A stretch of 64,000 nucleotides of DNA. Source: Macrostomum lignano (lineage: Eukaryota). Below the pieces are notes generated by a model, which was given only the letters and a program-made list of their open reading frames with translations, was not told the origin of the DNA and did no database searches. The stretch lies in contig NIVC01001752.1 in NCBI GenBank assembly GCA_002269645.1, positions 1-64,000 of the forward strand, in the 5' to 3' direction. Positions 6,001-60,939 of this stretch are shown piece by piece (position 1 is the stretch's first letter; every line of letters starts with the position of its first letter). Both the position numbers and the translations under genes were made by a program.

Positions 6001-8126
6001 GAGTCGTGAGATTCTGGGGGTAAGAATCGTGAGGTTCTGGGGTAAGAATCGTGAGATTCTGGGGTAAGATCGTGAGGTTCTGGGGTAAGAGTCGTGAGGT
6101 TCTGGGGTAAGAGTCGTGAGGTTCTGGGGTAAGAATCGTTAGAAGATTCTGGGGTAAGAATCGTGAGGTTCTGGGGTAAGAGTCGTGAGATTCTGAGGGT
6201 AAGAGTCGTGAGATTCTGAGGGTAAGAGTCGTGAGATTCTGGGGTAAGAGTCGTGAGATTCTGGGGGTAAGAATCGTTAGAAGATTCTGGGGTAAGAATC
6301 GTGAGGTTCTGGGGTAAGAGTCGTGAGATTCTGGGGGTAAGAGTCGTGAGATTCTGAGGGTAAGATCGTGAGATTCTGGGGTAAGAATCGTGAGATTCTG
6401 GGGGTAAGAATCGTGAGATTCTGGGGTAAGATCGTGAGATTCTGGGGGTAAGATCGTGAGATTCTGGGGGTAAGAATCGTGAGATTCTGGGGTAAGAATC
6501 GTGAGATTCTGGGGGTAAGAATCGTGAGATTCTGGGGTAAGAATCGTGAGATTCTGGGGTAAGATCGTGAGATTCTGGGGTAAGAATCGTGAGATTCTGG
6601 GTAAGAATCGTGAGATTCTGGGGTAAGAATCGTGAGATTCTGGGGTAAGAATCGTGAGATTCTGGGGTAAGAATCGTGAGATTCTGGGGTAAGAATCGTG
6701 AGATTCTGGGGTAAGAATCGTGAGATTCTGGGGGTAAGAATCGTGAGATTCTGGGGGTAAGAATCGTGAGATTCTGGGGGTAAGAATCGTGAGATTCTGG
6801 GGGTAAGAATCGTGAGATTCTGGGGTAAGAATCGTGAGATTCTGGGGGTAAGAATCGTGAGATTCTGGGGTAAGAATCGTGAGATTCTGGGGGTAAGAAT
6901 CGTGAGATTCTGGGGTAAGAATCGTGAGGTTCTGGGGGTAAGAATCGTGAGATTCTGGGGTAAGAATCGTGAGATTCTGGGGTAAGAATCGTGAGATTCT
7001 GGGGGTAAGAATCGTGAGGTTCTGGGGTAAGAATCGTGAGATTCTGGGGTAAGAGTCGTGAGGTTCTGGGGTAAGAATCGTGAGATTCTGGGGGTAAGAA
7101 TCGTGAGGTTCTGGGTAAGAGTCGTGAGGTTCTGGGGTAAGAATCGTGAGATTCTGGGGTAAGAATCGTGAGATTCTGGGGGTAAGAATCGTGAGATTCT
7201 GGGGTAAGAATCGTGAGGTTCTGGGGGTAAGAATCGTGAGGTTCTGGGGGTAAGAATCGTGAGGTTCTGGGGGTAAGAATCGTGAGATTCTGGGGTAAGA
7301 ATCGTGAGATTCTGGGGTAAGAATCGTGAGATTCTGGGGTAAGAGTCGTGAGGTTCTGGGGTAAGAGTCGTGAGGTTCTGGGGGTAAGAATCGTTAGAAG
7401 ATTCTGGGGGTAAGAATCGTGAGGTTCTGGGGTAAGAATCGTGAGATTCTGGGGGTAAGAATCGTGAGATTCTGGGGTAAGAATCGTGAGGTTCTGGGGT
7501 AAGAATCGTGAGATTCTGGGGGTAAGAATCGTGAGATTCTGGGGTAAGAATCGTGAGGTTCTGGGGGTAAGAATCGTGAGATTCTGGGGTAAGAGTCGTG
7601 AGGTTCTGGGGGTAAGAAGATTCTGGGGTAAGAATCGTGAGGTTCTGGGGGTAAAAATCGTTAGAAGATTCTGGGGTAAGAATCGTGAGGTTCTGGGGGT
7701 AAAATCGAGTTCTGTAAGAATCGTGAGGTTCTGGGGTAAGAATCGTGAGAAGAGGTTCTGGGGTAAGAGGTTCGTGAAGATTCTGGGGTAAGAATCGTGA
7801 GGTTCTGTGAGTCGTGATTCTGAGGGTAAGAATCGTTAGAAGATTCTGTAAGAGTGTTCTGAGGGTAAGAGTCGTGAGATTCTGAGGGTAAGAGTCGTGA
7901 GATTCTGAGGGTAAGAGTCGTGAGATTCTGAGGGTAAGAGTCGTGAGATTCTGAGGGGAGTCGTGAGATTCTGGGGGAATCGTGAGATTCTGGGGGTAAG
8001 CATCGTGAGATTCTGGGGGTAAGCATCGTGAGATTCTGGGGGTAAGCATCGTGAGATTCTTGGGGTAAGAATCGTGAGATTCTGGGGGTAAGCATCGTGA
8101 GATTCTGGGTGTAAGACTCGTGAGAT
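1..8126 (+). repeat. 22-23 bp G-rich minisatellite (GGGG[G]TAAGAATCGTGAG[G/A]TTCT), roughly 350 units, intronic in RIO2; continues beyond the window start
   Basis: The unit is readable throughout. The GAGGTTCT variant dominates 5' and GAGATTCT dominates from ~6200. The array ends ~45 nt before the RIO2 acceptor. Confidence 0.97.
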
Positions 8127-31420: not shown

Positions 31421-32148
31421 ATCCAATAAAGAATCGCAGTACAGACGCATAAACGAAGAAGTTTGGAACCCCAAAAAACTGACCAACCAACCGAAGAATG
31501 AGATAATGATTTACAATCATAAATATAAATCTACAGGTCAATTCGTTGCGAAAACAAAGACAGCAGCTCCAGCTCTTACAAGCGGCTTGGAAACTTTCAA
31601 AGGCCAATTATAATTTATGGCTACACTCCAAAACAAAGGGACAGTCGCGAGAAACGAATGCCAAACGGCTTATTTACGATTGGGGGTCAGTGTTTATTAT
31701 TGCTAATTAAATATTACACCTGCTGATTTACATTTTGATGGCGCTTTGATCTGTTAATTAGTTTCCAAAGCCAAGGCACGTTCGTGGTTACTTGAAGAGG
31801 ACACGTCTCGAAGACAAGAAGTCGTTTCTTCCTCAACAGGCCGACTGCATGCACTTTTCCTTGTCTGACGTGCCAGGCAAAACTTGTCGCGTAAAACCGG
31901 AATGGGAATTATGCAAATCAGGCCCGGCTGCGACTGTTGCTGCTGTGAGATGCTTATCGATGCTACAGCGATCTGGGGAGGCGCTCGCGGAGGTTGGGAG
32001 GTCCTGGTTTGTTGGGAGAGAATCTTGGGCACCGATAATTGGGCACTTATCCCGCCTTTGCAAGAAAATCCTTCAAGCGTTGGAGGCCTCTGTGGAGAAT
32101 TAGCTGGGAAACTGCGGGATCTGAGCTGGGAGCAAAGCAATGGGGAAT

Positions 32149-32547
<399 letters not shown>

Positions 32548-32763
32548 CCGGTATCGAAGTATATATCTATGTATCTATCATCATTAGCATTATTATCCTA
32601 AACACCTCAATCACTCTCTACCCAGCACAAGGTGGCCACACCCTGGAGGCGCACTGGCACAAAGGAATTGTTAATCTGCTGTCTCCAGCCTTTCCCAATG
32701 GAATTATGTCCCTGAGATAGCCGCAGCATATTTATCGCCCTGCAGATTTCACGCTTCACCGCC

Positions 32764-33144
32764 CACTCTTCCCCTGAAGTAGGATATTGGTCCATGAAAT
32801 ATACCAAGAAAGCGGTTTGTTTCCCATAGATCTGTGTCCTTATAGTAGCCTAAAACAATGTTCACTGAAATCCTATCGCATTGTCTGTACACCGTACAGG
32901 TATATTAATTAGTCCAGTACTAGCTGGCTGTTATAGTTGGTATTTACTTCACACTGGGGCCTCTGAATTGAATATTTATAGTAAAATTCAGACATGGATA
33001 TGCAGTTAAATACTTCAATAGATTCAATCCATTCGCACCTGCATATATCAACATTTGCACCTGTGTAATAACTACCTTTATATGCACCTTGACACCTGTA
33101 ATTTTTTTATCGTAAGTGCGAAACTGCCGTAACTGCGAAAAAAT
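32764..33144 (+). repeat. Left TIR of the transposon
   Basis: Reverse complement of 35752-36120. Confidence 0.93.
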
Positions 33145-33446
33145 CCATATAATAGATGGGCAAGGGGTAAAAACTATATATTCTACAGCTGTCACTTCAA
33201 AAAGCTAAAAGCACAACAGACTTTGTTTGTCAATCAAGATTTTCAAGCCTTGTCAGTGGTAGGCTTATGAGAAGGGAAATTTTAAATCGATCTCTTCCAT
33301 AGACATTTGATTTTGTTTCACAAGTTTTTGTTGGTATGTACACTGGTGTTGAGGGTTTGGCCATAGACAAAAGTCTTGAGGAGATGAGCTGACTGTCAGT
33401 GTGAAATTTATGCCTTTATATTTTTTGGCTTTCATTGCTTCTCAAA

Positions 33447-35498
33447 ATGCCTAACAGTAGGCGAACACACGAAGAAAGTCGAAACAGTGTGTGCATTTTA
33501 TGCTTTCGCAAGGGTGACCGACAATTGACTGTAAGTCTGGAAGCCTTAATCGAGTGCTATGTCCTGCCTGGATTTGCTCAACACCGAGCATTTCTGCCGT
33601 CAGGTATCTGCAACTCCTGCCGGATCAAGTTGTCATCGCAGAACAGTGCAGCACCAGCACCTCTTCCGCCTCGCTTGCCATACGAAAAAGTAATAGATGA
33701 TCTGCGCTACCTTCCACCACTCACTCGTGAACGTCCTGAGTGCAGCTGCTGGATCTGCAATGTCGCCTCCAGCAGGGCTAACAAGAACGTGAATGTAGCG
33801 CACCCCTACATGTCAGATGAGTTCAATTCAGGGGTAGCAACTCCACTTGGCCGTCCTCTGAACTGTGCACCTGGATCCGTGAAAGACAGCGTCAAACATT
33901 GCGGCACATGCTCGTCACCAGTGGCGCGGGGAGTGCGACATGAATGTGGACAAGCCGCAAAGCTGCGCTACCTCAGCACCTTGAGTCCAAGTTCAATGGA
34001 GCATGTAGCCTGCAGTTTTCTCCGCAAAAAACTAAACGCAGCAGACGTGTCTTCTTCCGGAGATGCTGCAACAGCTAGTCTGTCTTCTGGTTTCGGTGGG
34101 CATCCAATCCAAGTCCAAGCTGTTGACACATCAACCAGCCATGTCCCACAAATGTTGCACAGCACAATGAGGGCCATGAAAACTGCCTTGAACCTAAGCA
34201 CCAACCAGACCATTCAAGCTGCGCAAGTGATAAGAGAGGCGTCTGGCAACAGAAAAGCAATTCAACCTGGATTGAAGGAGTTCCTGTTTTCTGAAGGCCA
34301 GAGTGTCGCTCATTTCTTTGCTGTGGAGCAGCTCCAGTTCATCTGCAAGCAACCATCTGGGCAAGTAATTTCAATTGATCGTTCAGCTGTGTTCTGTTGC
34401 AATGTGAGTGAGTTCTTGGCTTATGTTTGCAGTTTGAGAGGCATGGCTGAGATGGAACATCATCTCAAGCTTGGAATTGATGGTGGAGGGAATTCATTGA
34501 AGATTTGCATCAGCGTTACTGATAGTGATGGGCTCCTGGCACAAGCTTCAATGCCTGGGCCATCCAATAGATTTCTCAACTCGGGGGTTAAAAAGCTTTT
34601 CGTCCTGGCCATCGTAGAGGATGTCAAAGAGTGTTACGAGAATGTCAAAACTCTATTATCCACCATGGACATCAGTTCCTTCCTATTCACTTTGGCCTGT
34701 GACTTCAAGCTAGCCAACATCATCTGTGGCATTCAAAGCCATGCTTCGACGCATCCTTGCCTTTACTGCGAGGGCAAGTCTCCATGGACCACTCCAGCAC
34801 CAAGCAGAACACTTGGCTCAGTGAGGCGGCTGGCAAACGAGTTTCAGTTGGCCGGCGGACATCAGCCTGCTGCCAAACACTTTGCCAACTGTGTTCAGTC
34901 TCCACTGCTGCCTGGACTGGATTCCACTGAACTGATTGAGTTGGTGCCACCACCTGAGCTGCACATTATGCTTGGCATTGTGAACCGTTTGCTGGATGAG
35001 CTCAACAACCGATGGGGCAATGATATGGCCTACAAGTGGGCCCATGGAGCAGGGATCTGTCGTCAGCAGTATCATGGAGGTTGCTTGGAAGGTCCAGCAT
35101 GCAAGAAGCTGCTTCTAAAGGCTGGCGAGCTATGGAACATTTTACCTGCGCACCTGAAAATGTTTGCCGTTGCACTTCAGGATTTCAATGCAATTCGGCT
35201 AGCCTGCTTTGGCCAAACTCTTGCCAATGACTTTGCTTTGCATATTGCTCGATTTCAGACGACATGCCAGTTCCTCCAGCTAAATGTGACACCCAAGATG
35301 CATGCACTATTCCACCATGTGCCAACATTCTGTTCAAAGTCTGGCAAGGCATTGGGGAGCTTTAGTGAGCAGACAGTGGAGTCAGCTCACAGTGATTTCG
35401 AGGCCACCTGGCAAAGATATCGGCGCCCTTTCAATCATCCACAGTACACCGCAAACCTTCTTCAGGCTGTTGTGAACTATAATTCGTTTCATATTTGA
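33447..35498 (+). CDS. DDE transposase, 683 aa, with Chapaev-type N-terminal zinc finger and RAG1/Transib-like catalytic core
   Basis: N-terminus: H8-X7-C16xxC19, P51-X3-C55xxC58, C99xC101xxC104, C152xxC155..H165xC167. Core: LGID345GGG, ACD419FKLANIICGIQ..C438xxC441, PPELHIMLG, H619xxxxH624, SEQTVE645SAH. No stops or frameshifts. Confidence 0.92.
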   Translation: MPNSRRTHEESRNSVCILCFRKGDRQLTVSLEALIECYVLPGFAQHRAFLPSGICNSCRIKLSSQNSAAPAPLPPRLPYEKVIDDLRYLPPLTRERPECSCWICNVASSRANKNVNVAHPYMSDEFNSGVATPLGRPLNCAPGSVKDSVKHCGTCSSPVARGVRHECGQAAKLRYLSTLSPSSMEHVACSFLRKKLNAADVSSSGDAATASLSSGFGGHPIQVQAVDTSTSHVPQMLHSTMRAMKTALNLSTNQTIQAAQVIREASGNRKAIQPGLKEFLFSEGQSVAHFFAVEQLQFICKQPSGQVISIDRSAVFCCNVSEFLAYVCSLRGMAEMEHHLKLGIDGGGNSLKICISVTDSDGLLAQASMPGPSNRFLNSGVKKLFVLAIVEDVKECYENVKTLLSTMDISSFLFTLACDFKLANIICGIQSHASTHPCLYCEGKSPWTTPAPSRTLGSVRRLANEFQLAGGHQPAAKHFANCVQSPLLPGLDSTELIELVPPPELHIMLGIVNRLLDELNNRWGNDMAYKWAHGAGICRQQYHGGCLEGPACKKLLLKAGELWNILPAHLKMFAVALQDFNAIRLACFGQTLANDFALHIARFQTTCQFLQLNVTPKMHALFHHVPTFCSKSGKALGSFSEQTVESAHSDFEATWQRYRRPFNHPQYTANLLQAVVNYNSFHI

Positions 35499-35751
35499 AC
35501 TTCTAACGTTATGGTTTGATCAACTGGACATAAACTGACTGACCTTGCCTGATTTATTTGTTTCTTCAATAGTGAGTTGCTAGTCTGTTTTAGTTGTATT
35601 GTATGGTTCTTTGTATTGTATTGTCTTTTGTATGGTTCTATTTCTGGTTTCTATTTCTAAACAATGTTCTATTCAGCAACATCTTTCGTATACATTCAGA
35701 ATACAAGCAACTTTTTAGACTTACTTATTATATCACTTTCAATCACTGTGA

Positions 35752-36120
35752 ATTTTTTCGCAGTACTTACGGTAGAAAAAAATTGAAGGTGTCAAGGTGC
35801 ATATAAAGGTAGTTATTACACAGGTGCAAATGTTGATATATGCAGGTGCGAATGGATTGAATCTATTGAAGTATTTAACTGCATATCCATGTCTGAATTT
35901 TACTATAAATATTCAATTCAGAGGCCCTAGTGTGAAGTAAATACTAACTATAACAGCCAGCTAGTACTGGACTAATTAATATACCTGTACGGTGCACAGA
36001 CAATGCGATAGGATTTCAGTGAACATTGTTTTAGGCTACTATAAGGACACAGATCCATGGGAAACAAACCGCTTTCTTGGTATATTTCATGGACCAATAT
36101 CCTACTTCAGGGGAAGAGTG
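35752..36120 (-). repeat. Right TIR of the transposon
   Basis: Reverse complement of 32764-33144. Confidence 0.93.
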
Positions 36121-36644
36121 CGCCTAGAAGCGTCTTTGACTTTCTGTTTAGCCAAACTAAACCCGACTGAGGGTCACCGCGCACCCCGACCATCAGATGA
36201 GAACATTGAAATCGCAATTTAAATACGCATTAAGCAGAAATTCAGCATAAACCGGATTTCAACAAAGCCTTCACAGGAAACCCGAAAAGCTTCATCATCA
36301 AAGACTCGAACGAAAAAAAAACTTAAGCCCGATCCATTGAAGTTTGCTTGGTTTTTTGTTCATAAAGCAACAACCGGCTTCGCCTATTTCCAAAATAGAA
36401 TTTAATAAAAACAGAAATTGTGTCTGTCATTGAAAAAATACCAGTTTAGGAAGGTTTGAAGCCATGGCGACCCAGAGCCAGAAGCTGGAGTTGCCAATTC
36501 GTCAACTTTTACACCAATTTTATCATAACTTAGCTTGGTTTGTCACTCTGTGAGTTGGCCAGCAGGGGTTGATAAACTGGGGTCCCCGAAGCATCTCTCT
36601 TTGAAACTTTACAGTAGCAATCCTGCCTGCTCATGATTTATGTC

Positions 36645-38438
36645 TCTTCTCAGCTCTCTGCTCTCTTCTCTCTCCTCTGCTCGCCTCTCTCTCCTCTTTT
36701 CTCCTCTGCTCTCCTCTCCTCTCCTCTCCTCTCTTTCCTCTCTTCTCCTCTCTCTCCTCTCTCTCCTCTCTCTCCTCTCCTCTCCTCTCCTCTCCTCTCC
36801 TCTTCTCTCCTCTCCTCTGATCTCCTCTCCTCTCCTCTCCTCTTTTCTCCTCTGCTGTCCTCTCCTCTCCTCTCCTCTCCTCTCCTCTCCTCTCCTCTCC
36901 TCTCCTCTCCTCTCCTCTCCTCTCCTCTCCTCTCATCTCCTCTCCTCTCCTCTCCTCTCCTCTCCTCTCCTCTCCTCTCCTCTCCTCTCCTCTCCTCTCC
37001 TCTCCTTTCCTCTCCTCTCCTCTCCTCTCCTCTCCTCTCCTCTCCTCTCCTCTCCTCTCCTCTCCTCTCCTCTCCTCTCCTCTCCTCTCCTCTCCTCTCC
37101 TCTCCTCTCCTCTCCTCTCCTCTCCTCTGATCTCCTCTCCTCTCCTCTCCTCTCCTCTCCTCTCCTCTCCTCTCCTCTCCTCTCCTCTCCTCTCCTCTCC
37201 TCTCCTCTCCTCTCCTCTCCTCTCCTCTCCTCTCCTCTCCTCTCCTCTCCTCTCCTCTCCTCTCCTCTCCTCTCCTCTCCTCTCCTCTCCTCTCCTCTCC
37301 TCTCCTCTCCTTTCCTCTCCTCTCCTCTCCTCTCCTCTCCTCTCCTCTCCTCTCCTCTCCTCTCCTTTCCTCTCCTCTCCTCTCCTCTCCTCTCCTCTCC
37401 TCTCCTCTCCTCTCCTCTCCTCTCCTCTCCTCTCCTCTCCTCTCCTCTCCTCTCCTCTCCTCTCCTCTCCTCTCCTCTCCTCTCCTCTCCTCTCCTCTCC
37501 TCTCCTCTCCTCTCCTCTCCTCTCCTCTCCTCTCCTCTCCTCTGATCTCCTCTCCTCTCCTCTCCTCTCCTCTCCTCTCCTCTTTTCTCCTCTGCTCTGC
37601 TGTCCTCTCCTCTCTCTCTCCTCTCCTCTCCTCTCCTCTCCTCTCCTCTCCTCTCCTCTCCTCTCCTCTCCTCTCCTCTCCTCTCCTCTCCTCTCCTCTC
37701 CTCTCCTCTCCTTTCCTCTCCTCTCCTCTCCTCTCCTCTCCTTTCCTCTCCTCTCCTCTCCTCTCCTCTCCTCTCCTCTCCTCTCCTCTCCTCTGATCTC
37801 CTCTCTCTCCTCTGCTCGCCTCTCTCTCCTCTTTTCTCCTCTGCTCTCCTCTCCTCTCCTCTCCTCTTTTCTCCTCTGCTCTGCTGTCCTCTCCTCTCCT
37901 CTCCTCTCCTCTCCTCTCCTCTCCTCTCCTCTCCTCTCCTCTCCTCTCCTCTTTTCTCCTCTGCTCTGCTGTCCTCTCCTCTCCTCTCCTCTCCTCTCCT
38001 CTCCTCTCCTCTCCTCTCCTCTCCTCTCCTCTCCTCTCCTCTCCTCTCATCTCCTCTCCTCTCCTCTCCTCTCCTCTCCTCCTCTCCTCTCCTCTCCTCT
38101 CCTTTCCTCTCCTCTCCTCTCCTCTCCTCTCCTCTCCTCTCCTCTCCTCTCCTCTCCTCTCCTCTCCTCTCCTCTCCTCTCCTCTCCTCTCCTCTCCTCT
38201 CCTCTGATCTCCTCTCCTCTCCTCTCCTCTCCTCTCCTCTCCTCTCCTCTCCTCTCCTTTCCTCTCCTCTGATCTCCTCTCCTCTCCTCTCCTCTCTCTC
38301 TCCTCTCCTCTCCTCTCCTCTCCTCTCCTCTCCTTTCCTCTCCTCTCCTCTCCTCTCCTCTCCTCTCCTCTCCTCTCCTCTCTCTCTCCTCTCCTCTCCT
38401 CTCCTCTCCTCTCCTCTGATCTCCTCTCTCTCCTCTCA
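36645..38438 (+). repeat. (CTCCT)n polypyrimidine satellite, ~1.8 kb
   Basis: Almost purely C/T pentamer run. Confidence 0.98.
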
Positions 38439-41560: not shown

Positions 41561-42427
41561 TCGTGACTCACTCACAAGAACGATTTAATTAATTTCCCTA
41601 TTGAGCACATTACTAATGATTTAAACACTGACACATGTGTAACATCCCTTAAAACATTGAGCACATTAATCCTGAACAGTTCCTCATTGTAGCCAAAGTT
41701 AATTATCCTCTTTTGTCTGTCGACCAACTGACTAACTGCCCACGCGCCGCCGGGGCCGAAGCATTATTTGGAGCAATTATTTTTTATTTGATTTTTACAG
41801 CACAGCCCGAGCTGATAGGGTCGTAAATTTATGGTGTACAACATGAGTGCAACCTTGACCACAGTCAAGCACTGTGACACACGCATTTATTAATGTTACT
41901 AAAATGGCCTGATAGCTAGCAGTTTCAAAGCTGGGCCCCAATTTTTATTAACCTCAATAAACTGACTGTGGCTGACACCGGGGCTTCCTGTCTGCCTCGT
42001 CTGCTTCCTCTCCTGGAGGCAGGGAAACCGGCATCTGCCCTTCCCTCCCCATCTGCCTCTGGAAGAAGAGAGAGTGGCAATTCCCAGCGATTCCCCCCCT
42101 CGTTTCCGAAACTGACACCGCATCGGTTAAAATCTCGTTTTCTAAGAAATGGATCCTGATTGCATGTCGCCGCCTGAAATGCATTTTTAGATATCTTCGT
42201 TGATGTGCCTGCCAATAAGGTGGTTTGTTATCAAATGATCTTGTAGGCTATTTGGCAGGATGCCGTGATTATTAAGTGCTGTAATTTAATTTTTTCTAGC
42301 TTTGAACTGTTGCCATCGATTTCTGGTAATCCGAATTTTGCTGAGTTTCTTGCCGCAGCTCTTGCTGGCACGCTGAGATACATGCTCTGGCTGAGATGCG
42401 GAATGAACTGGATTTGTGCACCCCATC

Positions 42428-44040
42428 CATTTCCTTCTCCATCTCCATCTTCCTCTCCATCTTCATCTCCCTCTCCCTCTCCCTCTCCCTCTCCCTCTCC
42501 CTCTCCCTCTCCATCTCCCTCTCCATCTCCCTCTCCCTCTCCCTCTCCCTCTCCCTCTCCCTCTCCCTCTCCCTCTCTATTTCCCTCTCCATCTCCATCT
42601 CCATCTCCCTCTCCATCTTCCTCTTCCTCTCCCTCTCCCTCTCCCTCTCCCTCTCCCTCTCCCTCTCCCTCTCCCTCTCCCTCTCCCTCTCTATTTCCCT
42701 CTCCATCTCCATCTCCCTCTCCCTCTCCCTCTCCCTCTCCCTCTCCATCTCCCTCTCCATCTCCATCTCCCTCTCCATCTCCATCTCCCTCTCCCTCTCC
42801 CTCTCCCTCTCCCTCTCCCTCTCCCTCTCCATCTCCCTCTCCATCTCCATCTCCATCTTCCTCTCCCTCTCCCTTTTCCTCTCCCTCTCCCTCTCCCTCT
42901 CCCTCTCCCTCTCCCTCTCCCTCTCTATTTCCCTCTCCATCTCCATCTCCATCTCCCTCTCCCTCTCCCTCTCCATCTCCCTCTCCATCTCCATCTCCCT
43001 CTCCATCTCCATCTCCCTCTCCATCTCCATCTCCCTCTCCCTCTCCCTCTCCCTCTCCCTCTCCCTCTCCCTCTCCCTCTCCCTCTCCCTCTCCCTCTCC
43101 ATCTCCCTCTCCATCTCCCTCTCCATCTCCCTCTCCATCTCCATCTCCCTCTCCATCTCCATCTCCCTCTCCCTCTCCCTCTCCCTCTCCATCTCCCTCT
43201 CCATCTCCATCTCCATCTTCCTCTCCCTCTCCCTTTTCCTCTCACTCTCCCTCTCCCTCTCCCTCTCCCTCTCCCTCTCCCTCTCCCTCTCTATTTCCCT
43301 CTCCATCTCCATCTCCATCTCCCTCTCCCTCTCCCTCTCCATCTCCCTCTTCATCTCCATCTCCCTCTCCATCTCCATCTCCCTCTCCCTCTCCCTCTCC
43401 CTCTCCCTCTCCCTCTCCCTCTCCCTCTCCCTCTCCCTCTCCCTCTCCATCTCCCTCTCCATCTCCCTCTCCATCTCCCTCTCCATCTCCATCTTCCTCT
43501 CCCTCTCCCTCTCCCTCTCCCTCTCCCTCTCCCTCTCCCTCTCCCTCTCCCTCTCTATTTCCCTCTCCATCTCCATCTCCATCTCCCTCTCCCTCTCCCT
43601 CTCCATCTCCCTCTCCATCTCCATCTCCCTCTCCATCTCCATCTCCCTCTCCCTCTCCCTCTCCCTCTCCCTCTCCCTCTCCCTCTACCTCTCCCTCTCC
43701 CTCTCCATCTCCCTCTCCATCTCCCTCTCCATCTCCCTCTCCATCTCCATCTCCATCTCCCTCTCCATCTCCCTCTCCATCTCTCCATCTCCATCTCCCT
43801 CTCCATCTCCATCCCCCTCTCTCCCTCTCCCTCTCCATCTCCCTCTCCATCTCCCTCTCCATCTCCATCTCCATCTCCCTCTCCCTCTCCCTCTCCATCT
43901 CTCCATCTCCATCTCCCTCTCCATCTCCATCCCCCTCTCTCCCTCTCCATCTCCATCTCCCTTTCCACCCCCTCTCTCTACCTCTCCATCACTATTTTCC
44001 TTTTCATCCCCTGTCTCTCTCCCTCTCCCTCTCCGCCATC
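42428..44040 (+). repeat. (CTCCCT/CTCCAT)n hexamer polypyrimidine tract
   Basis: Hexamer run; reverse complement of the 58.5-60.4 kb tract family. Confidence 0.97.
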
Positions 44041-44624
44041 CCTATCTCTTACATCTAATTCTATTCTTTTCAAAAGGAGAACTTTTTCTTCCCACCCTCC
44101 TAACTTCACTGCTCCGCCGTCAAAGTCTTCCCAAGAAACCGTTTTCCTCGTGACCTACTCAACTCGCTCGCTCAACCAAAAAACCCCTCATATTTCTCAT
44201 TTTCCAAATGTCACAAGCAGAAAAGAATCCTATGAAAGGAATACCAGGATCGCCTCTCTATTGCGTTTGCAAACTTTTATCCCATCGAACTCTGTCTCAT
44301 CTCAATCCCTTCGCATTTCCTATCTACTTCCCAGCTATAGTACTGCCCTCGAACTTAATTTTGACCCTCTATACCTAAGCCAGGGGTTAGGGAGGTCCAC
44401 CATTCTTGGAGAAAGAATTTCTCATTCGAACGGAACTCCTTCGGCTGGCACAAAATCAATTTGGGTTCGAGTTTTTCAGCTCAAGCTCAGATTTAGTCAT
44501 GGCTTGCTTTCTTGGAGCCCGAGCTAGACAGCCGCAGAACCCTAATTTAAGCCCATTCATCTGCGTTTCATTCAAATCCTCAGTCAAATCGTAATCTGCA
44601 CTTTTGCATTGATCCGCTACCGGT

Positions 44625-53375: not shown

Positions 53376-53393
53376 ATGTTTGAAAATTGCTAG
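53376..53393 (+). other. Short upstream ORF (MFENC*) in the protocadherin leader
   Basis: ATG TTT GAA AAT TGC TAG lies between the acceptor (AG 53369-53370) and the main ATG at 53416. Confidence 0.5.
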
Positions 53394-53415
53394 CAGATTT
53401 TACTCCTCACAAAGC

Positions 53416-56163
53416 ATGCGGATCGTACGAATCTTGAGTCTTCTGCAACTGCTGACTACGGCCGCCTTCGCCGCCATCGAGATGCCTCTGGGAGCTGACG
53501 ATGTCAACTTCAACACCAAGGTGGGAAATCTGGCTCGCCAGGATCGAACGCTGCCAGCGCCTGAGTCCGAGTCCGGTCAGTACGACAGCGTCCGGCTCAT
53601 CCCGCTGAACAGCAGGCTGGCCGGCTACTTCACCATCGATCGTCAGACCACCGTGTCGGCGATGCGCGACATCGACCGCGACGAGATTTGCTCTCTGGCC
53701 GCCTGCTGCGAGACCATCGACTGTCGGCTTGACTACACCGTGTCCATCACCGTGCGAGCCGGCTTCCCCGTGACCAGATCCCTCAGCCTGATCCTGGTTG
53801 ACGAGAACGATCAGAAACCAATCTTCCCCAATCTGGAGCCAATCGACATCGCAGAGGACGCGCCAGTCGGCCTGACTAATATCCGCCTGGCCTCGGCCAC
53901 CGACAAGGACTCGCCGCCGAATCGGGTGAAAAATTACAGCATGACCGACCCAAGCGGCACGTTCGATGTCTTCATCCGGGACGGAGTGGTGCCGTACCTC
54001 AAGCTGCTGGTACCGCTGGACCGGGAGCGCGTGCCCCAGTACCAAGTGACGCTCCGAGCTACAGACGGTGCGCACGAGAGCTCCGTTGTGGTGACAATCC
54101 GCGTCACGGATGTCAACGACAATTCCCCCGTGTTCGTTAGAGATCTGGTGACAACCAGTTTTTCCGAGAACGAAAAAGTTGGCGCGCAAATCACCCCCCT
54201 GTCGGCGAACGACGTCGATACGGGACCGAACGCCAACCTGACCTACAGTATCGAATCAGTGACGCCCGCAGCTCTCGCCAGCCACTTCAGCGTGGGTATC
54301 AAGGACGGTCAGTCGAAACTGTTGCTAGCTAAGAGCTTAGATTATGAGCAACCGGAGCAGCGTTCGGCTAAAATCCTGGTTGTCGCCCGGGATCAGGGCA
54401 CTCCGCCGAGGTCTTCCACCTTGACAATCCAAGTCAGCGTCACAGACTATAACGACAACGATCCAGTGATCAAGGAGCTCAGCAGCCATGTCCTGGAGGA
54501 GCACATGCCGGCGGGCCAGCTGGTGAAAACCCTACTGGTCACTGACGCCGATAAAATTTCCATCGGGCTGGTGATCTGCAAGATCGATTCTTCCAATCCA
54601 CGCTTCCGGCTGCAACTCGGCAGCGCCTCCACCACCCTGGATTCGATGGAGCGGCTGATTTACAACATGACAACGGCTTCATCATTCGACTACGAGGTCA
54701 TGCAGGTGGAGACCGTCAAGATCAAGTGTGTTGACAACGCCTCGCCGGGTCGACACGCGTCTCGAACCTACGAAATTCCAATCAACGAGACCAACGACTT
54801 CGCACCGATCTTTGACAAGAGAAATTACCACGCCGCCGTTTACGAAGATCTCGCCGAAGGCCTCTCAGTCCTGCCCATGCCGGTGCTGGCTACCGATAAG
54901 GACAGGGGCACCTACGGCGTGGTGCTCTATGAACTGGATGCCGAAGGGCAGAAGAACTTCAGCATTCGTGAGTCCAGCGGAATTGTTGAAGTTCGCGGCC
55001 GACTGGACAGGGAAACAGCCACGCATCTGAGCTTCAAGGTGATAGCGAAGAACTACGACGGGCCAAAAGGTGTTCTAAGCGACACGGCCAAGGTGGTAAT
55101 CGAACTTCTGGACGTGAACGACAACAAGCCGCAGTACCTAGGACCTCCAGGCTTCTCTGTTGTCGAGAACTCGCCCCCGGGAACCCTGGTGGGCCGCGTA
55201 CAGTTCCAAGACGACGACGCTGGAGAGAACGGCACCGTTCGCTTCCAGATCAGCGGATCCGAGAACGACAATGTCGCCAACGAGTACCTGCGGCTTGACG
55301 AGGCCGGCAACATCACCGTGCAGAAGAAGATCGACCGCGAGATCCACAGCAGATTCTTCCTGTCCATCAGAGCCAACGACCTTGGCCGGCAGGTCACCCA
55401 AACCACTGTAGTTCAGCTGGATATCGAAGTGCAGGACGTCAACGACTGTCACCCGGTGATCCGCGAGCCCAGGCCGAGCGCCCTGGTCGGCGTAAATCCC
55501 GTCGTTTACACCGATCTGCCGCGCAAATCCATGCTGGTGCTGGTGCTGGCCGAGGACAAGGACCGGGGCGAGAACGGGACCCTGACCTACCGCCTGGGTC
55601 CTGGCAACGCCACCGACCTGCTGGGCATTGACGCCGACAAAGGCGAGCTGCACTCGCTGTGGGACCCTCAGTTGCAGCCGCCGCCGCCCGGAATCTACTC
55701 CGTCACGGTCATCGTGTCGGACCGCGGCACGCCCGAACTGTTGGAGGATCGCGTCGCCTTCTACCTGAAGCTCACCGCGCCTCGCGGGCAACTGTACCGG
55801 TTCGGCTCCGCGGGACTCAGCGGCCTCATTATCTTGGTGGTGATCATTGCCGGCACAGTCATCATCGCTGTTGGATTGATCGCCGCGATCTGCTACGTCC
55901 GCGGACGCTCTGGACTGTCCGCATTTGGCAACGACCCGGCCGACAGCGAGGCGCGGGTCAAGATGACGGACGAGGACGGCGGTTGCGGCGGCTACCGTGA
56001 CAGTCCACGGATCTACGGGAGCCAGCAACAGCAGCAGCTCCTGCTGCAGCAGCAACAGCAGCATCAGCAGCAGATGCACCAGCAGCATCAGCAGCAGTTC
56101 TACACCTGGCAGAGATCGGGATCTCCTATGGGCAGCTTGATGAAGGAAGACTGCAACAGCCAG
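53416..56163 (+). CDS. Protocadherin (delta-like; 7 cadherin repeats, TM helix, polyQ cytoplasmic segment), large coding exon
   Basis: Signal peptide MRIVRILSLLQLLTTAAFA. Six DxND/NxxP linkers (DENDQKP, DVNDNSP, DYNDNDP, ETNDFAP, DVNDNKP, DVNDCHP) plus a 7th repeat. LDRE/DxD motifs, Cys-containing EC1 (IDRDEIC..CC....C), TM IILVVIIAGTVIIAVGLIAAICYV. Donor CAG|GTAAGA at 56164 (phase 0). The C-terminus continues in later exon(s). Confidence 0.95.
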
Positions 56164-56231
56164 GTAAGATGAGCCTGCGGTGCTTTTTTAGTATAAATTT
56201 TGGTAGTTCAATGAGTAGATTGATGGATAGC

Positions 56232-57900: not shown

Positions 57901-58012
57901 TAAAGTGCCGTTAACCCTAGCTGAGCATAAGTATAAAATTTTTCAACTCAGCCCCAGCGCCCAAGCGCATCTTCATCTCTGGGGCTCTGCTTGTTTCCTT
58001 CATCCTTTTCAG

Positions 58013-58096
58013 CCTGTCGGAAGCCGCTGCCTCTTCAGGGAAAGTGCAGGAAATTGCTGCTGTCACGGCAGTTTTGTTTTAATGCAGCGCCAGTGA
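58013..58096 (+). CDS. Possible short terminal exon of the protocadherin (PVGSRCLFRESAGNCCCHGSFVLMQRQ*)
   Basis: Good polypyrimidine tract plus TTTTCAG ending at 58012, and the phase-0 join is open. No recognisable homology, so weak. Confidence 0.2.
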   Translation, partial: PVGSRCLFRESAGNCCCHGSFVLMQRQ

Positions 58097-58537
58097 AAAG
58101 GACCGCCTTTTCTACTAGAGCTATGTCAGGGACCTCTAGGGGAGATTTGGACTGGTAGCTAACGACAGGCAGTCCTACTAATTGAATCCAGAGGTCCATG
58201 ACAGTAGGCCTGAACAAACTGGGAACTGAAATGTTTGACTAAAAAAATTTAGAAAAATAGAATGTGCGAAGGATGATGAGAGAGGAACTTGGAGGCGGGT
58301 ACGAGACTACAGATTCTGAGTCTGTGTGCTCTATAATAACAAAAAAGTTGCTCAGTCTGCTTTGGCTGAAGAAAAGTATTCACTAGCAAGCATAACTGCG
58401 CTGGGATCGAATTTCAAGCAGACATTCTTTTATTATGCCTTTCACTGTCTTATCGCTATTGACTACAGATGTGCCATTGGGCTCGCATTTTGTTGAATTC
58501 AAAATGCGGGAAATTGGAGATACACAGAAGGAAGCGG

Positions 58538-60378
58538 AAAAGGAGAGAGAGGGGGAAGGGGAGGAGAAGAAGGAGAGAGAGAGAGAGAGGGAGAGGGAGA
58601 GGGAGAGGGAGATGGAGAGGGAGAGGGAGATGGAGATGGAGAGGGAGATGGAGAGGGAGAGGGAGAGTGAGGGAGAGGGAGAGGGAGAGGGAGAGGGAGA
58701 TGGAGAGGGAGAGGGAAAAGGAGATGAAGAGGGAGAGTGAGGGAGAGGGAGAGGGAGAGGGAGAGGGAGATGGAGAGGGAGATGGAGAGGGAGAGGGAGA
58801 GAGAGAGTGAGAGAGAGGGAGAGGGAGAGGGAGATGGAGATGGAGAGGAAGAGGGAGAGGGAGAGGGAAAGGGAGATGAAAAGGGAGAGTGAGGGAGAGG
58901 GAGAGGGAGAGGGAGAGGGAGAGGGAGATGGAGAGGGAGAGGGAGAGAGAGAGTGAGAGAGAGGGAGAGGGAGATGGAGATGGAGAGGGAGAGGGAGAGG
59001 GAGAGGGAAAGGGAGATGAAAAGGGAGAGTGAGGGAGAGGAGAGGGAGAGGGAGAGGGAGATGGAGAGGGAGAGGGAGAGGGAGATGGAGAGGGAGAGGG
59101 AGAGTGAGGGAGAGGGAGAGGTAGAGGGAGAGGGAGAGGGAGAGGGAGAGGGAGAGGGAGAGTGAGAGGGAGAGGGAGATGGAGAGGGAGAGGGAGAGGG
59201 AGAGGGAGAGTGAGGGAGAGGGAGAGGGAGAGGTAGAGGGAGAGGGAGAGGGAGAGGGAGAGTGAGGGAGAGGGAGAGGGAGAGGGAGAGGGAGAGGGAG
59301 AGGGAGAGGGAGAGGGAGAGGGAGAGGGAGAGGGAGAGGGAGAGGGAGAGGGAGAGGGAGAGGGAGAGGGAGAGGGAGAGGGAGAGGGAGAGGGAGAGGA
59401 GAGGGAGAGGGAGAGGGAGAGGGAGAGGAGAGTGAGGGAGAGGGAGAGGTAGAGGGAGAGGGAGAGGGAGAGGGAGAGGGAGAGTGAGAGGGAGAGGGAG
59501 ATGGAGAGGGAGAGGGAGAGGGAGAGGGAGAGTGAGGGAGAGGGAGAGGGAGAGGTAGAGGGAGAGGGAGAGGGAGAGGGAGAGTGAGGGAGAGGGAGAG
59601 GGAGAGGGAGAGGGAGAGGGAGAGGGAGAGGGAGAGGGAGAGGGAGAGGGAGAGGGAGAGGGAGAGGGAGAGGGAGAGTGAGGGAGAGGGAGAGGGAGAG
59701 GTAGAGGGAGAGGGAGAGGGAGAGGGAGAGTGAGGGAGAGGGAGAGGGAGAGGGAGAGGGAGAGGGAGAGGGAGAGGGAGAGGGAGAGGGAGAGGGAGAG
59801 GGAGAGGGAGAGGGAGAGGGAGAGGGAGAGGGAGAGGGAGAGGGAGAGGGAGAGTGAGGGAGATGTAGAGGGAGATGGAGAGGGAGATGGAGAGGGAGAG
59901 GGAGAGGGAGAGGGAGAGTGAGGGAGAGGGAGAGGGAGAGGGAGATGGAGAGGGAGATGGAGAGGGAGAGGGAGATGGAGAGGGAGAGGGAGATGGAGAG
60001 GGAGAGGGAGAGGGAGAGGGAGAGTGAGGGAGAGGGAGAGGGAGAGGTAGAGGGAGAGGGAGAGGGAGAGGGAGAGTGAGGGAGAGGGAGAGGGAGAGGG
60101 AGAGGGAGAGGGAGAGGGAGAGGGAGAGGGAGAGGGAGAGGGAGAGGGAGAGGGAGAGGGAGAGGGAGAGGGAGAGGGAGAGGGAGAGGGAGAGGGAGAG
60201 GGAGAGTGAGGGAGATGGAGAGGGAGATGGAGAAGGAGATGGAGAGGGAGTGGGAGAGGGAGAGGGAGAGTGAGGGAGAGGGAGAGGGAGAGGGAGATGG
60301 AGAGGGAGATGGAGAGGGAGAGGGAGATGTAGAGGGAGAGGGAGAGGGAGATAGCGAGGGAGATTGAGAGGGAGAGTG
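58538..60378 (+). repeat. (GAGAGG/GATGGA)n hexamer polypurine tract, ~1.8 kb
   Basis: Hexamer run; inverted relative of 42428-44040. Confidence 0.97.
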
Positions 60379-60939
60379 GGCGGACACTGCCTCTCTGAAG
60401 CTGTATTAATTTGAATCGTACCCTCGTAATTTAACCTTAATATTAAAAAAACGTTTTTAAAAACTGAAAAACTTTTAAGCCATCCTGACGGGCTAGGAGC
60501 TCCCGAACTCTAAAACCCACCGATATGTAACGAAAACTATTCTGACTCGAGCCAGTGCGAGACACAAGACCGACCCCTGCCGTAGGTTGTGAAAATCAAG
60601 AAGTGAAAAAATCACAGTTGAATTATGTTTCTTCAATTAATTTCAGCTATTTCGAATTGAAAATCGTGGACTGTCCCAATTATAATTCCATTCCTCAGGT
60701 TTTGCGAGCTCTCTGAATGCTTATTCACCAACTTTTCAATATGCTGCGAGTGGTTGATTCGATTTCTGGGAGCAACTTTTTTTGAGCTTCGAATTAGGCG
60801 GTAATATAATATTTGCATGGCAACCGAACCCTCGGGGGCTTAAATAAGAGTTGTTTCGAGGCGAAAAGCTACTTATTTAGCATCAGAGTTCTACTACCGT
60901 GACCTCAGATCTTTGAGATCCCTGGGTGAGCTTATACTG

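What the first reader, a model, noticed from the sequence alone, without database searches (positions are those of the whole stretch)
32760..36124. Intact Chapaev-like transposon with a RAG1-like catalytic core and very long (~370 bp) TIRs
Seen: CAC...GTG ends, 4-bp TSD CGCC, near-identical long TIRs and an uninterrupted 683-aa ORF. The ORF has H-X7-CxxC / P-X3-CxxC / CxCxxC zinc-finger motifs, plus D345, D419, E645, CxxC and H-x4-H. Established: Chapaev elements have CAC ends, 4-bp TSDs and an N-terminal zinc finger shared with the RAG1 non-core region. Transib and ProtoRAG elements have CAC ends with 5-bp TSDs, and a DDE core with a CxxC/HxxxxH zinc site (RAG1 SEGNE962S aligns here with SEQTVE645S). 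Inference: a young, possibly active element that combines both RAG1-like modules in one intronless gene with no RAG2-like partner, which could inform RAG1 ancestry and serve as a transgenesis tool.
Basis: partly seen in the sequence, partly recalled or inferred. Interest (0 to 1): 0.82.

Follow-up and report, generated by a model that had tools for sequence, protein, structure and literature searches.

The report
Young Chapaev DNA transposon in flatworm
This is an intact, recently mobile cut-and-paste transposon of the already described Chapaev family in what is almost certainly the flatworm Macrostomum lignano; its RAG1-like enzyme is real but typical of the family, so it is a good specimen rather than a discovery.

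Summary
Window 32764-36120 is a 3357-bp element with CAC...GTG ends and a 4-bp CGCC duplication. Its inverted repeats differ at 4 of the first 334 nt, and it carries one intact 683-aa ORF.

The RAG1-like reading also holds. The only significant PDB matches to the predicted structure are the RAG1 core (E 5e-13) and HzTransib (E 2e-7). A profile alignment puts D419, C438/C441, H619/H624 and E645 on RAG1 D708, C727/C730, H937/H942 and E962.

It is a member of a known family:
- The N-terminal zinc domain matches the published Chapa domain of Hydra Chapaev-2_HM (BLASTP 8e-17, profile 1e-21).
- Relatives hit Pfam DUF1280, which the literature equates with Chapaev.
- Five independent insertions all fit a 4-bp duplication.
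- The family is large: 9609 clusters at 50% identity.

Kapitonov and Koonin (2015) already described the Chapa domain plus Transib-like core architecture and used it to argue RAG1 ancestry, so the novelty claim fails.

What remains is a young, possibly active autonomous Chapaev in a laboratory flatworm. A second copy is about 99% identical but frameshifted. Long inverted repeats (160-335 nt) are shared with relatives. Verdict: new member of a known kind, low to moderate interest.

The parts
32760..32763 (.). Left copy of the 4-bp target-site duplication, CGCC
   Evidence: Only a length of 4 matches on both sides.
32764..33098 (+). Left terminal inverted repeat, starting CACTCTTCCCCTGAAG. The near-perfect part is shown; weaker similarity with indels continues to about 33140.
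   Evidence: 4 mismatches in the first 334 nt.
32865..32921 (+). Conserved subterminal block TGAAATCCTATCGCATTGTCTG...GTACAGGTAT..TAATTAGT, about 100 nt inside the left end. Inferred to be a transposase-binding site.
   Evidence: conserved with the 71%-identical paralogous family (L001); a similar motif lies at about the same offset from the ends of L004, a 52%-identical relative.
33447..35498 (+). Intronless transposase gene, 683 aa plus stop codon
   Evidence: Homologues. dN/dS of 0.11 against the paralogous family.
33468..33947 (+). N-terminal Chapa-type zinc domain, aa 8-167. Conserved candidate zinc ligands (zinc binding inferred): H8, C16, C19, C55, C58, C99, C101, C104, C152, C155, H165, C167.
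   Evidence: for conservation. for matches to the published Chapaev-2_HM and Chapaev-1_AA Chapa domains. Model pLDDT is 80-92 over residues 11-90.
34158..35495 (+). RAG1/Transib-like catalytic core, aa about 238-683. It contains D345 (34479-34481), D419 (34701-34703), C438/C441, the LH motif (L505-H506), H619/H624 and E645 (35379-35381).
   Evidence: Foldseek; hhalign; invariant columns. The three codons were read directly.
35963..36019 (-). Mirror copy of the conserved subterminal block in the right repeat
35786..36120 (-). Right terminal inverted repeat, ending ...CTTCAGGGGAAGAGTG
36121..36124 (.). Right copy of the 4-bp target-site duplication, CGCC

Best explanation
This is an autonomous cut-and-paste DNA transposon of the Chapaev group. 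That group is filed under the CMC superfamily by Yuan and Wessler and under the Transib superfamily by Kapitonov and Koonin. The element belongs to the subgroup without a RING finger, typified by Hydra Chapaev-1/2/5_HM and Aedes Chapaev-1_AA. It almost certainly sits in the genome of the flatworm Macrostomum lignano.

Shown:
- Its single intronless gene encodes a 683-aa transposase.
- The N-terminus is a multi-zinc Chapa domain.
- The C-terminus is a RAG1/Transib-like RNase-H-fold core with a D345/D419/E645 triad and a CxxC plus HxxxxH set of conserved residues that align with the RAG1 zinc ligands.

Inferred mechanism:
- Transposase multimers bind the long inverted repeats, through the CAC terminus and conserved subterminal blocks.
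- They excise the element. By analogy with RAG and HzTransib this probably starts with a nick next to CAC and forms a hairpin on the flanking DNA.
- They insert the 3'-OH ends 4 bp apart in the target, which produces the 4-bp duplication.

The family was active recently in this genome, and this copy may still be able to transpose.
For: Structure of the element:
- CAC/GTG ends, a 4-bp duplication, near-identical long repeats and an intact ORF.

Mobility, shown by copies at unrelated loci, each with its own 4-bp duplication:
- L003: about 99% identical in nucleotides, duplication CAAT.
- L001 and L002: a paralogous family 71% identical in protein, duplications GTCA and CAGT.
- L007: a 36%-identical relative from another organism, duplication AAAA, with 259-nt repeats.

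Fold:
- All 26 Foldseek PDB hits with E<=1e-3 are RAG1 core or HzTransib. The best is E 5e-13, with TM 0.45-0.54 over about 560 columns.
- hhalign against 22 vertebrate RAG1 sequences gives P=0.0012, with collinear alignment of D2, CxxC, LH, HxxxxH and E.

Chapaev membership:
- BLASTP of the N-terminus against the published Chapaev-2_HM Chapa domain gives 8e-17.
- The family profile against Chapaev-2_HM gives 1.2e-21, and against Chapaev-1_AA 3.6e-10.
- 13 of 63 relatives hit Pfam DUF1280. Majorek 2014 equates DUF1280 with Chapaev transposases.
- The C(2)C, LH and H(4)H motifs are present. PMC4079192 lists them as Chapaev hallmarks.

Selection: dN/dS is 0.11 between the two flatworm subfamilies.
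Against: - No transposition assay, transcript evidence or empty site was available, so current activity is inferred only.
- The window protein itself hits no Pfam model, including DUF1280 and the RAG1 models.
- Full-length Repbase Chapaev transposases were not available. Subgroup placement rests on the N-terminal domain, taken from a machine-read PDF supplement.
- hhalign probability for the core against RAG1 is only 19%, despite P=0.0012.
- The hairpin mechanism is borrowed from RAG and Transib and has never been shown for a Chapaev element.
- The other full copy of this exact subfamily that was retrieved (L003) is frameshifted.
Confidence: 0.88

Rival explanations
1. It is a true Transib, ProtoRAG or RAG1-like element, closer to RAG1 than ordinary Chapaevs are. 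That would make it a missing link carrying both RAG1 modules.
For: The best structural matches are RAG1 and HzTransib. The DDE, CxxC and HxxxxH residues align with RAG1. The invariant N-terminal H/C/P positions line up with invariant RAG1 positions H106, C114, C117, P175, C179, C182, C214 and C217.
Against: - The duplication is 4 bp, not 5, in 5 of 5 insertions.
- No Pfam RAG1 model is hit. Only 1 of 63 relatives gives a weak RAG1_imp_bd hit, at E=0.033.
- Sequence similarity to RAG1 is marginal: profile against the PDB gives E=0.91, and the N-terminus gives P=0.022 with 2 of 120 shuffles scoring as high.
- Matches to published Chapaev domains are far stronger, at 1e-21.
- There is no RING finger and no RAG2-like ORF.
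- The PDB holds no CMC transposase, so RAG1 would be the nearest solved structure for any Chapaev.
Confidence: 0.04
2. It belongs to another CMC branch: Chapaev3, CACTA/EnSpm or Mirage.
For: It has CAC termini, and the first five bases, CACTC, resemble CACTA. The C(2)C and H(4)H motifs are shared across the CMC superfamily.
Against: - Chapaev3 makes 3-bp TWA duplications and has 11-19-nt repeats. None of the five duplications here is TWA or 3 bp.
- The family profile against the Chapaev3-5_HM N-terminus gives only E=0.049.
- No relative reaches E<=0.01 for Pfam Transposase_21 (CACTA) or DUF1258 (Mirage); the only DUF1258 hit is one member at E=0.096.
Confidence: 0.05
3. It is a dead copy, or a domesticated host gene, that merely looks intact.
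For: No expression or excision data exist. The sister copy L003 carries a 1-bp deletion that splits the ORF. This exact protein is not on record in the gene-call collection.
Against: - Both repeats and the duplication are intact, and the repeat arms differ by about 1.2%.
- The two copies differ by about 0.9%.
- All catalytic and zinc-ligand residues are conserved.
- A domesticated gene would not keep repeats and duplications, and would not sit at several unrelated loci.
Confidence: 0.3

Closest known systems
Chapaev transposons, subgroup without a RING finger (Repbase Chapaev-1_HM, -2_HM, -5_HM of Hydra; Chapaev-1_AA of Aedes). Kapitonov and Jurka 2007; Kapitonov and Koonin 2015.
   Same: CAC/GTG termini and a 4-bp duplication. 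The N-terminal Chapa zinc domain has the same pattern: HE..R..VC.LC...K.DR, then P..IC..CR, then TR....C.C.IC, then K.C..C.S.I. Matches are E 8e-17 and 1e-21. It also has a DDE core with C(2)C, LH and H(4)H motifs, a single ORF and no RING finger.
   Different: About 30% identity to Chapaev-2_HM in the N-terminal domain, so it is a separate family in a different phylum (Platyhelminthes). The repeats are very long, 335-370 nt. I could not check how this compares with Repbase Chapaevs, but relatives retrieved here have 160-320-nt repeats, so it is a trait of the clade and not of this copy.
RAG1 core, amphioxus ProtoRAG RAG1L and HzTransib transposase
   Same: They share the overall fold (the only significant PDB matches). 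The second catalytic D, the CxxC pair 19 residues after it, the HxxxxH pair and the catalytic E about 20 residues later are all collinear. The element ends begin with CAC.
   Different: The duplication is 4 bp rather than 5. Sequence identity is only about 12%, and no Pfam RAG1 model is hit. There is no RAG2-like partner, no RING finger and no heptamer-spacer-nonamer ends. The repeats run to hundreds of nt instead.
Chapaev3 (Merrow, Garfield and Conan families)
   Same: CAC termini, a CMC-type DDE core and a Chapa-like N-terminal zinc finger.
   Different: Chapaev3 elements make 3-bp TWA duplications between A and T and have 11-19-nt repeats (PMC4079192, PMC3014272). The N-terminal profile match is only E=0.049.
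CACTA/En-Spm and Mirage
   Same: The same CMC superfamily in the Yuan and Wessler scheme. CAC(TA)-like ends, with subterminal repeats serving as transposase-binding sites.
   Different: Their duplications are 3 bp and 2 bp. They match different Pfam families (Transposase_21 and DUF1258). They have no Chapa domain, and CACTA elements usually carry a second gene.

Membership tests
Chapaev | Terminal inverted repeats with invariable 5'-CAC...GTG-3' ends | tested here: met
   Window element; L001, L002 and L003; L007. The definition is taken from PMC4079192.
Chapaev | Target-site duplication of 3-4 bp | tested here: met
   CGCC, CAAT, GTCA, CAGT and AAAA at five unrelated insertion sites. The L003 site could also be read as a 9-bp duplication, because the target is itself a short repeat.
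Chapaev | DDE transposase with C(2)C, LH and H(4)H motifs | tested here: met
   D345, D419, C438, C441, H506 and E645 are invariant, and L505, H619 and H624 are at least 90% conserved, in 63 relatives.
Chapaev | N-terminal Chapa zinc-finger domain | tested here: met
   BLASTP 8e-17 against the Chapaev-2_HM Chapa domain. Profile 1.2e-21. Chapaev-1_AA 3.6e-10. Reference sequences were read from Additional file 5 of PMC4411706, which is machine-read text that may contain errors.
Chapaev | Match to Pfam DUF1280 (PF06918), which Majorek et al. 2014 equate with Chapaev transposases | tested here: inconclusive
   13 of 63 family members match. The best is E 6.4e-7 and 29.6 bits against a cut-off of 25, covering residues 209-345 of P0017. 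The window protein itself does not match at E<=1.
Chapaev | Phylogenetic placement among full-length Repbase or Dfam Chapaev transposases | not testable with these tools
   Neither Repbase nor Dfam is available. Only N-terminal fragments from a supplement could be used.
Transib / RAG1-like | 5-bp target-site duplication | tested here: not met
   4 bp at all five sites.
Transib / RAG1-like | RAG1-type fold: RNase H domain with an inserted CxxC/HxxxxH zinc module | tested here: met
   Foldseek E 5e-13 to RAG1 and 2e-7 to HzTransib, with no other significant PDB fold.
Transib / RAG1-like | Significant sequence match to RAG1 or Transib models | tested here: not met
   No Pfam RAG1 hit. The family profile against PDB RAG1L gives E=0.91. 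Only profile-profile comparison reaches P=0.0012.
Transib / RAG1-like | RAG2-like partner gene (TransibSU and ProtoRAG only) | tested here: not met
   The element carries one credible ORF. The other ORFs are 81-85 aa; two lie antisense inside the transposase gene and one lies on the minus strand within the left repeat.
Chapaev3 | 3-bp TWA duplication, with insertion between A and T | tested here: not met
   None of the five duplications is TWA or 3 bp.
CACTA/EnSpm and Mirage | 3-bp or 2-bp duplication, with a Transposase_21 or DUF1258 domain | tested here: not met
   The duplications are 4 bp. Transposase_21 is not among the listed hits, and the only DUF1258 hit is one of 63 members at E=0.096, which is not significant.

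The most novel reading that the evidence does not exclude
The window copy is a currently active, autonomous Chapaev element in a laboratory flatworm that can already be made transgenic. To my knowledge (not checked in the literature search here) no Chapaev transposase has been characterised biochemically, so this would be the first tractable one. It would allow three direct tests:
- whether a Chapaev transposase cleaves by the RAG/Transib nick-and-hairpin route without a RAG2-like partner;
- what the Chapa domain shared with the RAG1 N-terminus does;
- whether the conserved block about 100 nt inside each end acts as a second binding site, loosely like the RSS nonamer.

A side lead: the first zinc module scores as a ZAD (Pfam zf-AD) domain in 16 of 63 relatives. 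That hints at a structural link between ZAD domains and the RAG1 N-terminus.
Probability: 0.35. Interest if true: 0.5.

Novelty: new member of a known kind. Interest (0 to 1): 0.28.

Why it matters
It matters modestly.

Kapitonov and Koonin 2015 describe a transposase joining the RAG1 N-terminal zinc domain to a RAG1-like core, and Majorek et al. 2014 group Chapaev with RAG1.

This copy adds three things:
- a clean, intact, young example with well-defined ends and duplication, in a model flatworm;
- independent structural support that a Chapaev core folds like RAG1 and Transib;
- the observation that long repeats of 160-335 nt, with a conserved subterminal block, are shared across this clade.

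It could serve as starting material for the first biochemical study of a Chapaev transposase, or as an endogenous insertion tool in Macrostomum. It also needs to be masked or annotated correctly in flatworm genome annotations, where its relatives are currently labelled 'hypothetical protein'.

Tried and rejected
- Pfam scan of the window protein: no hit, even at E<=1.
- Single-sequence and profile searches of PDB sequences: only noise (OXA beta-lactamase) and a non-significant RAG1L hit at E=0.91. The fold search was needed to see the relationship.
- Bacterial-type promoter and terminator scan: irrelevant for a eukaryotic element and not above the shuffled background.
- The GCACCTG repeats in the inner part of the repeats looked like possible binding sites. 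They are not conserved in the paralogous family, so I dropped them in favour of the block at 102-158 nt.
- Cluster look-ups to obtain organism names for the closest relatives: only unnamed metagenome and read-archive (Logan) proteins came back.
- Exact look-up of the window protein: not on record, so no count of identical copies was possible.
- Literature search for a published Macrostomum Chapaev: nothing specific found.
- Direct test of the N-terminus against the vertebrate RAG1 N-terminus: only marginal, P=0.022 with 2 of 120 column shuffles scoring as high. I treat that homology as supported mainly through the published Chapa alignment.
- L005 and L006, contigs from distant relatives: L006 is cut off inside its repeats, and L005 shows no terminal repeats at all. 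No termini or duplications could be read.
- Left unused as not decisive: the third homology search, the second structure job and the viral fold library.
Full report
**1. The observation**

- The element spans 32764-36120 (3357 bp). It begins with CACTCTTCCCCTGAAG and ends with the exact reverse complement.
- CGCC lies immediately outside both ends, at 32760-32763 and 36121-36124. Only a length of 4 gives identical flanking words.
- The repeat finder reports inverted arms of 358 nt at 97%. Thirteen of those nt are flank, because the insertion site is itself a small palindrome.
- Inside the element the first 334 nt of the two arms differ at four positions. Similarity then continues with indels to about 370 nt.
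- One ORF (33447-35498, + strand, ATG start, 683 aa) fills the middle. The only other ORFs of 80 aa or more inside the element are three short minus-strand ones, so there is no RAG2-like partner.

**2. It is a mobile family, and the duplication length holds**

The closest database proteins are 'hypothetical proteins' of the flatworm Macrostomum lignano. The window is therefore almost certainly from that species or a very close relative. I fetched their loci.
- L003 holds a second copy of the same element at an unrelated site. Homology starts and stops exactly at the element ends.
- The two copies differ by 29 substitutions and 3 indels. A 1-bp deletion at window position 33928 splits the ORF in L003. 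Its duplication is CAAT. A 9-bp reading is also possible there, because the target is a short tandem repeat.
- A paralogous family, 71% identical in protein, is present at two further unrelated loci, L001 and L002. It has 322-nt repeats at 99%, ends CACGCCTCCCCTGAAG, and duplications GTCA and CAGT.
- A 36%-identical relative on a 259-kb contig from another organism (L007) has CACTGTTG...CAACAGTG ends, 259-nt repeats at 98% and the duplication AAAA.
- A 52%-identical relative (L004) has repeats of about 160 nt. Its right end reads CACGCCCCATCTGAAATCC; at the left end the first two bases (CA) are not seen, because a (CG)n tract abuts the repeat.

All five insertions with readable ends fit a 4-bp duplication. 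Long repeats are a property of this clade, not a peculiarity of this copy. dN/dS between the two flatworm subfamilies is 0.11, although dS is saturated. That indicates purifying selection on the transposase.

**3. What the protein is: the catalytic core**

Pfam gives nothing for the window protein. Sequence searches of the PDB give only noise plus a non-significant RAG1L hit.

An AlphaFold2 model built on a 12-sequence alignment has mean pLDDT 75 and is well ordered over residues 11-90 and from about 270 onward, apart from a disordered loop at about 361-381. I searched it against the PDB with Foldseek.
- All 26 matches with E<=1e-3 are RAG1 core structures (best E 5e-13, TM 0.45-0.54 over about 560 columns) or HzTransib (E 2e-7).
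- The next hit has E=0.06.

A profile of 63 diverse relatives was aligned to a profile of 22 vertebrate RAG1 sequences. The alignment covers 256 collinear columns at P=0.0012. RAG1 numbering below is the mouse numbering, from my knowledge of the RAG1 literature.

| This protein | RAG1 |
|---|---|
| D419 | D708 |
| C438/C441 | C727/C730 |
| L505-H506 | the 'ALH' motif |
| H619/H624 | H937/H942 |
| E645 | E962 |

D345, D419, C438, C441, H506 and E645 are invariant, and L505, H619 and H624 nearly so, in the 63 relatives.

**4. What the protein is: the N-terminus and family membership**

Twelve conserved candidate zinc ligands, enough for three sites, are invariant or nearly so: H8, C16, C19, C55, C58, C99, C101, C104, C152, C155, H165 and C167.

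Additional file 5 of Kapitonov and Koonin 2015 prints the 'Chapa domain' of RAG1, RAG1L and Repbase Chapaev elements. Its rows for Chapaev-1/2/5_HM (Hydra) and Chapaev-1_AA (Aedes) show the same pattern as this family.

| Comparison | Result |
|---|---|
| Window N-terminus vs Chapaev-2_HM fragment, BLASTP | E=8e-17, 30% identity over 133 aa |
| Family profile vs Chapaev-2_HM | E=1.2e-21, probability 99.4% |
| Family profile vs Chapaev-1_AA | E=3.6e-10 |
| Family profile vs Chapaev3-5_HM | E=0.049 |

A second, independent line supports this. Thirteen of 63 relatives hit Pfam DUF1280, the best above the curated cut-off, over the region just before the first catalytic D. Majorek et al. 2014 state that DUF1280 corresponds to Chapaev transposases and that it clusters with RAG1.

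The hallmarks listed for Chapaev in PMC4079192 are all met: CAC/GTG ends, a 3-4-bp duplication, and C(2)C, LH and H(4)H motifs. Chapaev3 is excluded by its 3-bp TWA duplication and short repeats. Transib is excluded by its 5-bp duplication.

The direct comparison of the N-terminus with the vertebrate RAG1 N-terminus is only marginal: P=0.022, with 2 of 120 column shuffles scoring as high. Even so, the invariant H/C/P positions of the family fall on invariant RAG1 positions.

**5. Size of the family**

A profile search of 1.84 billion cluster representatives found 9609 clusters with E<=1e-3 and 1437 with E<=1e-30. Many are full-length proteins of 640-730 aa. This is a large, widespread family, not an oddity.

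**6. How it most likely works**

Shown: a DDE transposase gene between long inverted repeats, and repeated insertion that creates 4-bp duplications.

Inferred from the RAG1/HzTransib-like fold and from established knowledge of those enzymes:
- A transposase dimer or tetramer pairs the two ends and nicks beside CAC.
- It releases the element, probably through a hairpin on the flanking DNA.
- It joins the 3'-OH ends to target phosphates 4 bp apart.

Conservation between the two flatworm subfamilies is concentrated in a few blocks:
- the terminal 16 nt;
- a block at about 25-42 nt;
- a block at 102-158 nt, TGAAATCCTATCGCATTGTCTG...GTACAGGTAT..TAATTAGT.

The rest of the repeat has diverged. L004 carries a similar motif at about the same offset, and GAAATCCTA also occurs in the repeat of L006, a 33%-identical relative. 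These blocks are candidate binding sites, for the Chapa domain or for the helical region before the core.

**7. Comparison with what is known, and novelty**

Kapitonov and Koonin 2015 already state the following:
- Chapaev and Chapaev3 carry the Chapa domain shared with the RAG1 N-terminus.
- Their cores are distant members of the Transib superfamily.
- The fusion of Chapa (and RING) with the core predates RAG1.

What is new is limited:
- a flatworm member, about 30% identical to the Hydra reference in the N-terminal domain;
- an intact and apparently young copy;
- structural confirmation of the RAG1-like fold;
- the long-repeat and subterminal-block anatomy.

I found no paper describing Chapaev elements in Macrostomum. 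I could not check Repbase or Dfam.

**8. Verdict**

The element is a new member of a known kind. Confidence in the classification is about 0.9. Whether this copy is active now is open, at roughly one in three. Interest is about 0.28. It is useful as a clean substrate for the first Chapaev biochemistry, or as a flatworm insertion tool, but it would not surprise a specialist.

Noticed in passing
window 32865-32921 and 35963-36019; L001 about 2211-2267; L004 about 176-215 and 2768-2806: A block about 100 nt inside each end (TGAAATCCTAxC..ATTGTCTG...) is conserved between elements whose transposases are only 52-71% identical, while most of the surrounding repeat sequence has diverged. GAAATCCTA also lies in the repeat of a 33%-identical relative (L006). 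It may be a second transposase-binding site.
   Followed up: partly
window 32751-32763 and 36121-36133: The pre-insertion target reads ACGCTTC-AC-CGCC-TA-GAAGCGT. That is a 7-bp palindrome placed symmetrically around the 4-bp duplication. The L001 site shows no such symmetry on inspection; the other three sites were not checked for it. It may be chance.
   Followed up: partly
window protein residues 16-58 (nt 33492-33620); relatives P0014 and P0017, residues 12-65: The first CxxC...CxxC module of the Chapa domain scores as Pfam zf-AD (the ZAD domain of insect zinc-finger proteins) in 16 of 63 relatives, best E 6.8e-8. This suggests a ZAD-like treble-clef fold for this part of the domain, and by extension for the matching part of the RAG1 N-terminus.
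   Followed up: partly
window 53380-56172 (+): A 930-aa ORF made of cadherin repeats (Pfam Cadherin E 1e-72, five repeats). It is probably a large exon of a host cadherin or protocadherin-type gene.
   Followed up: partly
window 1-8000, 36000-38400, 42000-44500, 58000-60400; also 32053-32560: Long low-complexity tracts with extreme strand skew (GC skew about +/-0.65 to 0.83), for example (CTCCT)n-like runs starting about 500 bp downstream of the element. An 8-bp-period microsatellite lies about 200 bp upstream of it. These tracts create long spurious ORFs.
   Followed up: no
L007 8479-9811 (-): Next to the distant Chapaev relative lie fragments with weak zf-BED and ZBED1 RNase-like hits, probably the remains of a hAT-type transposon.
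   Followed up: no
L003 3528-5590: In the public M. lignano annotation the sister copy is called as a 529-aa 'hypothetical protein' (P0001). A 1-bp deletion splits the transposase ORF, so transposon genes are being annotated as host genes in that assembly.
   Followed up: yes
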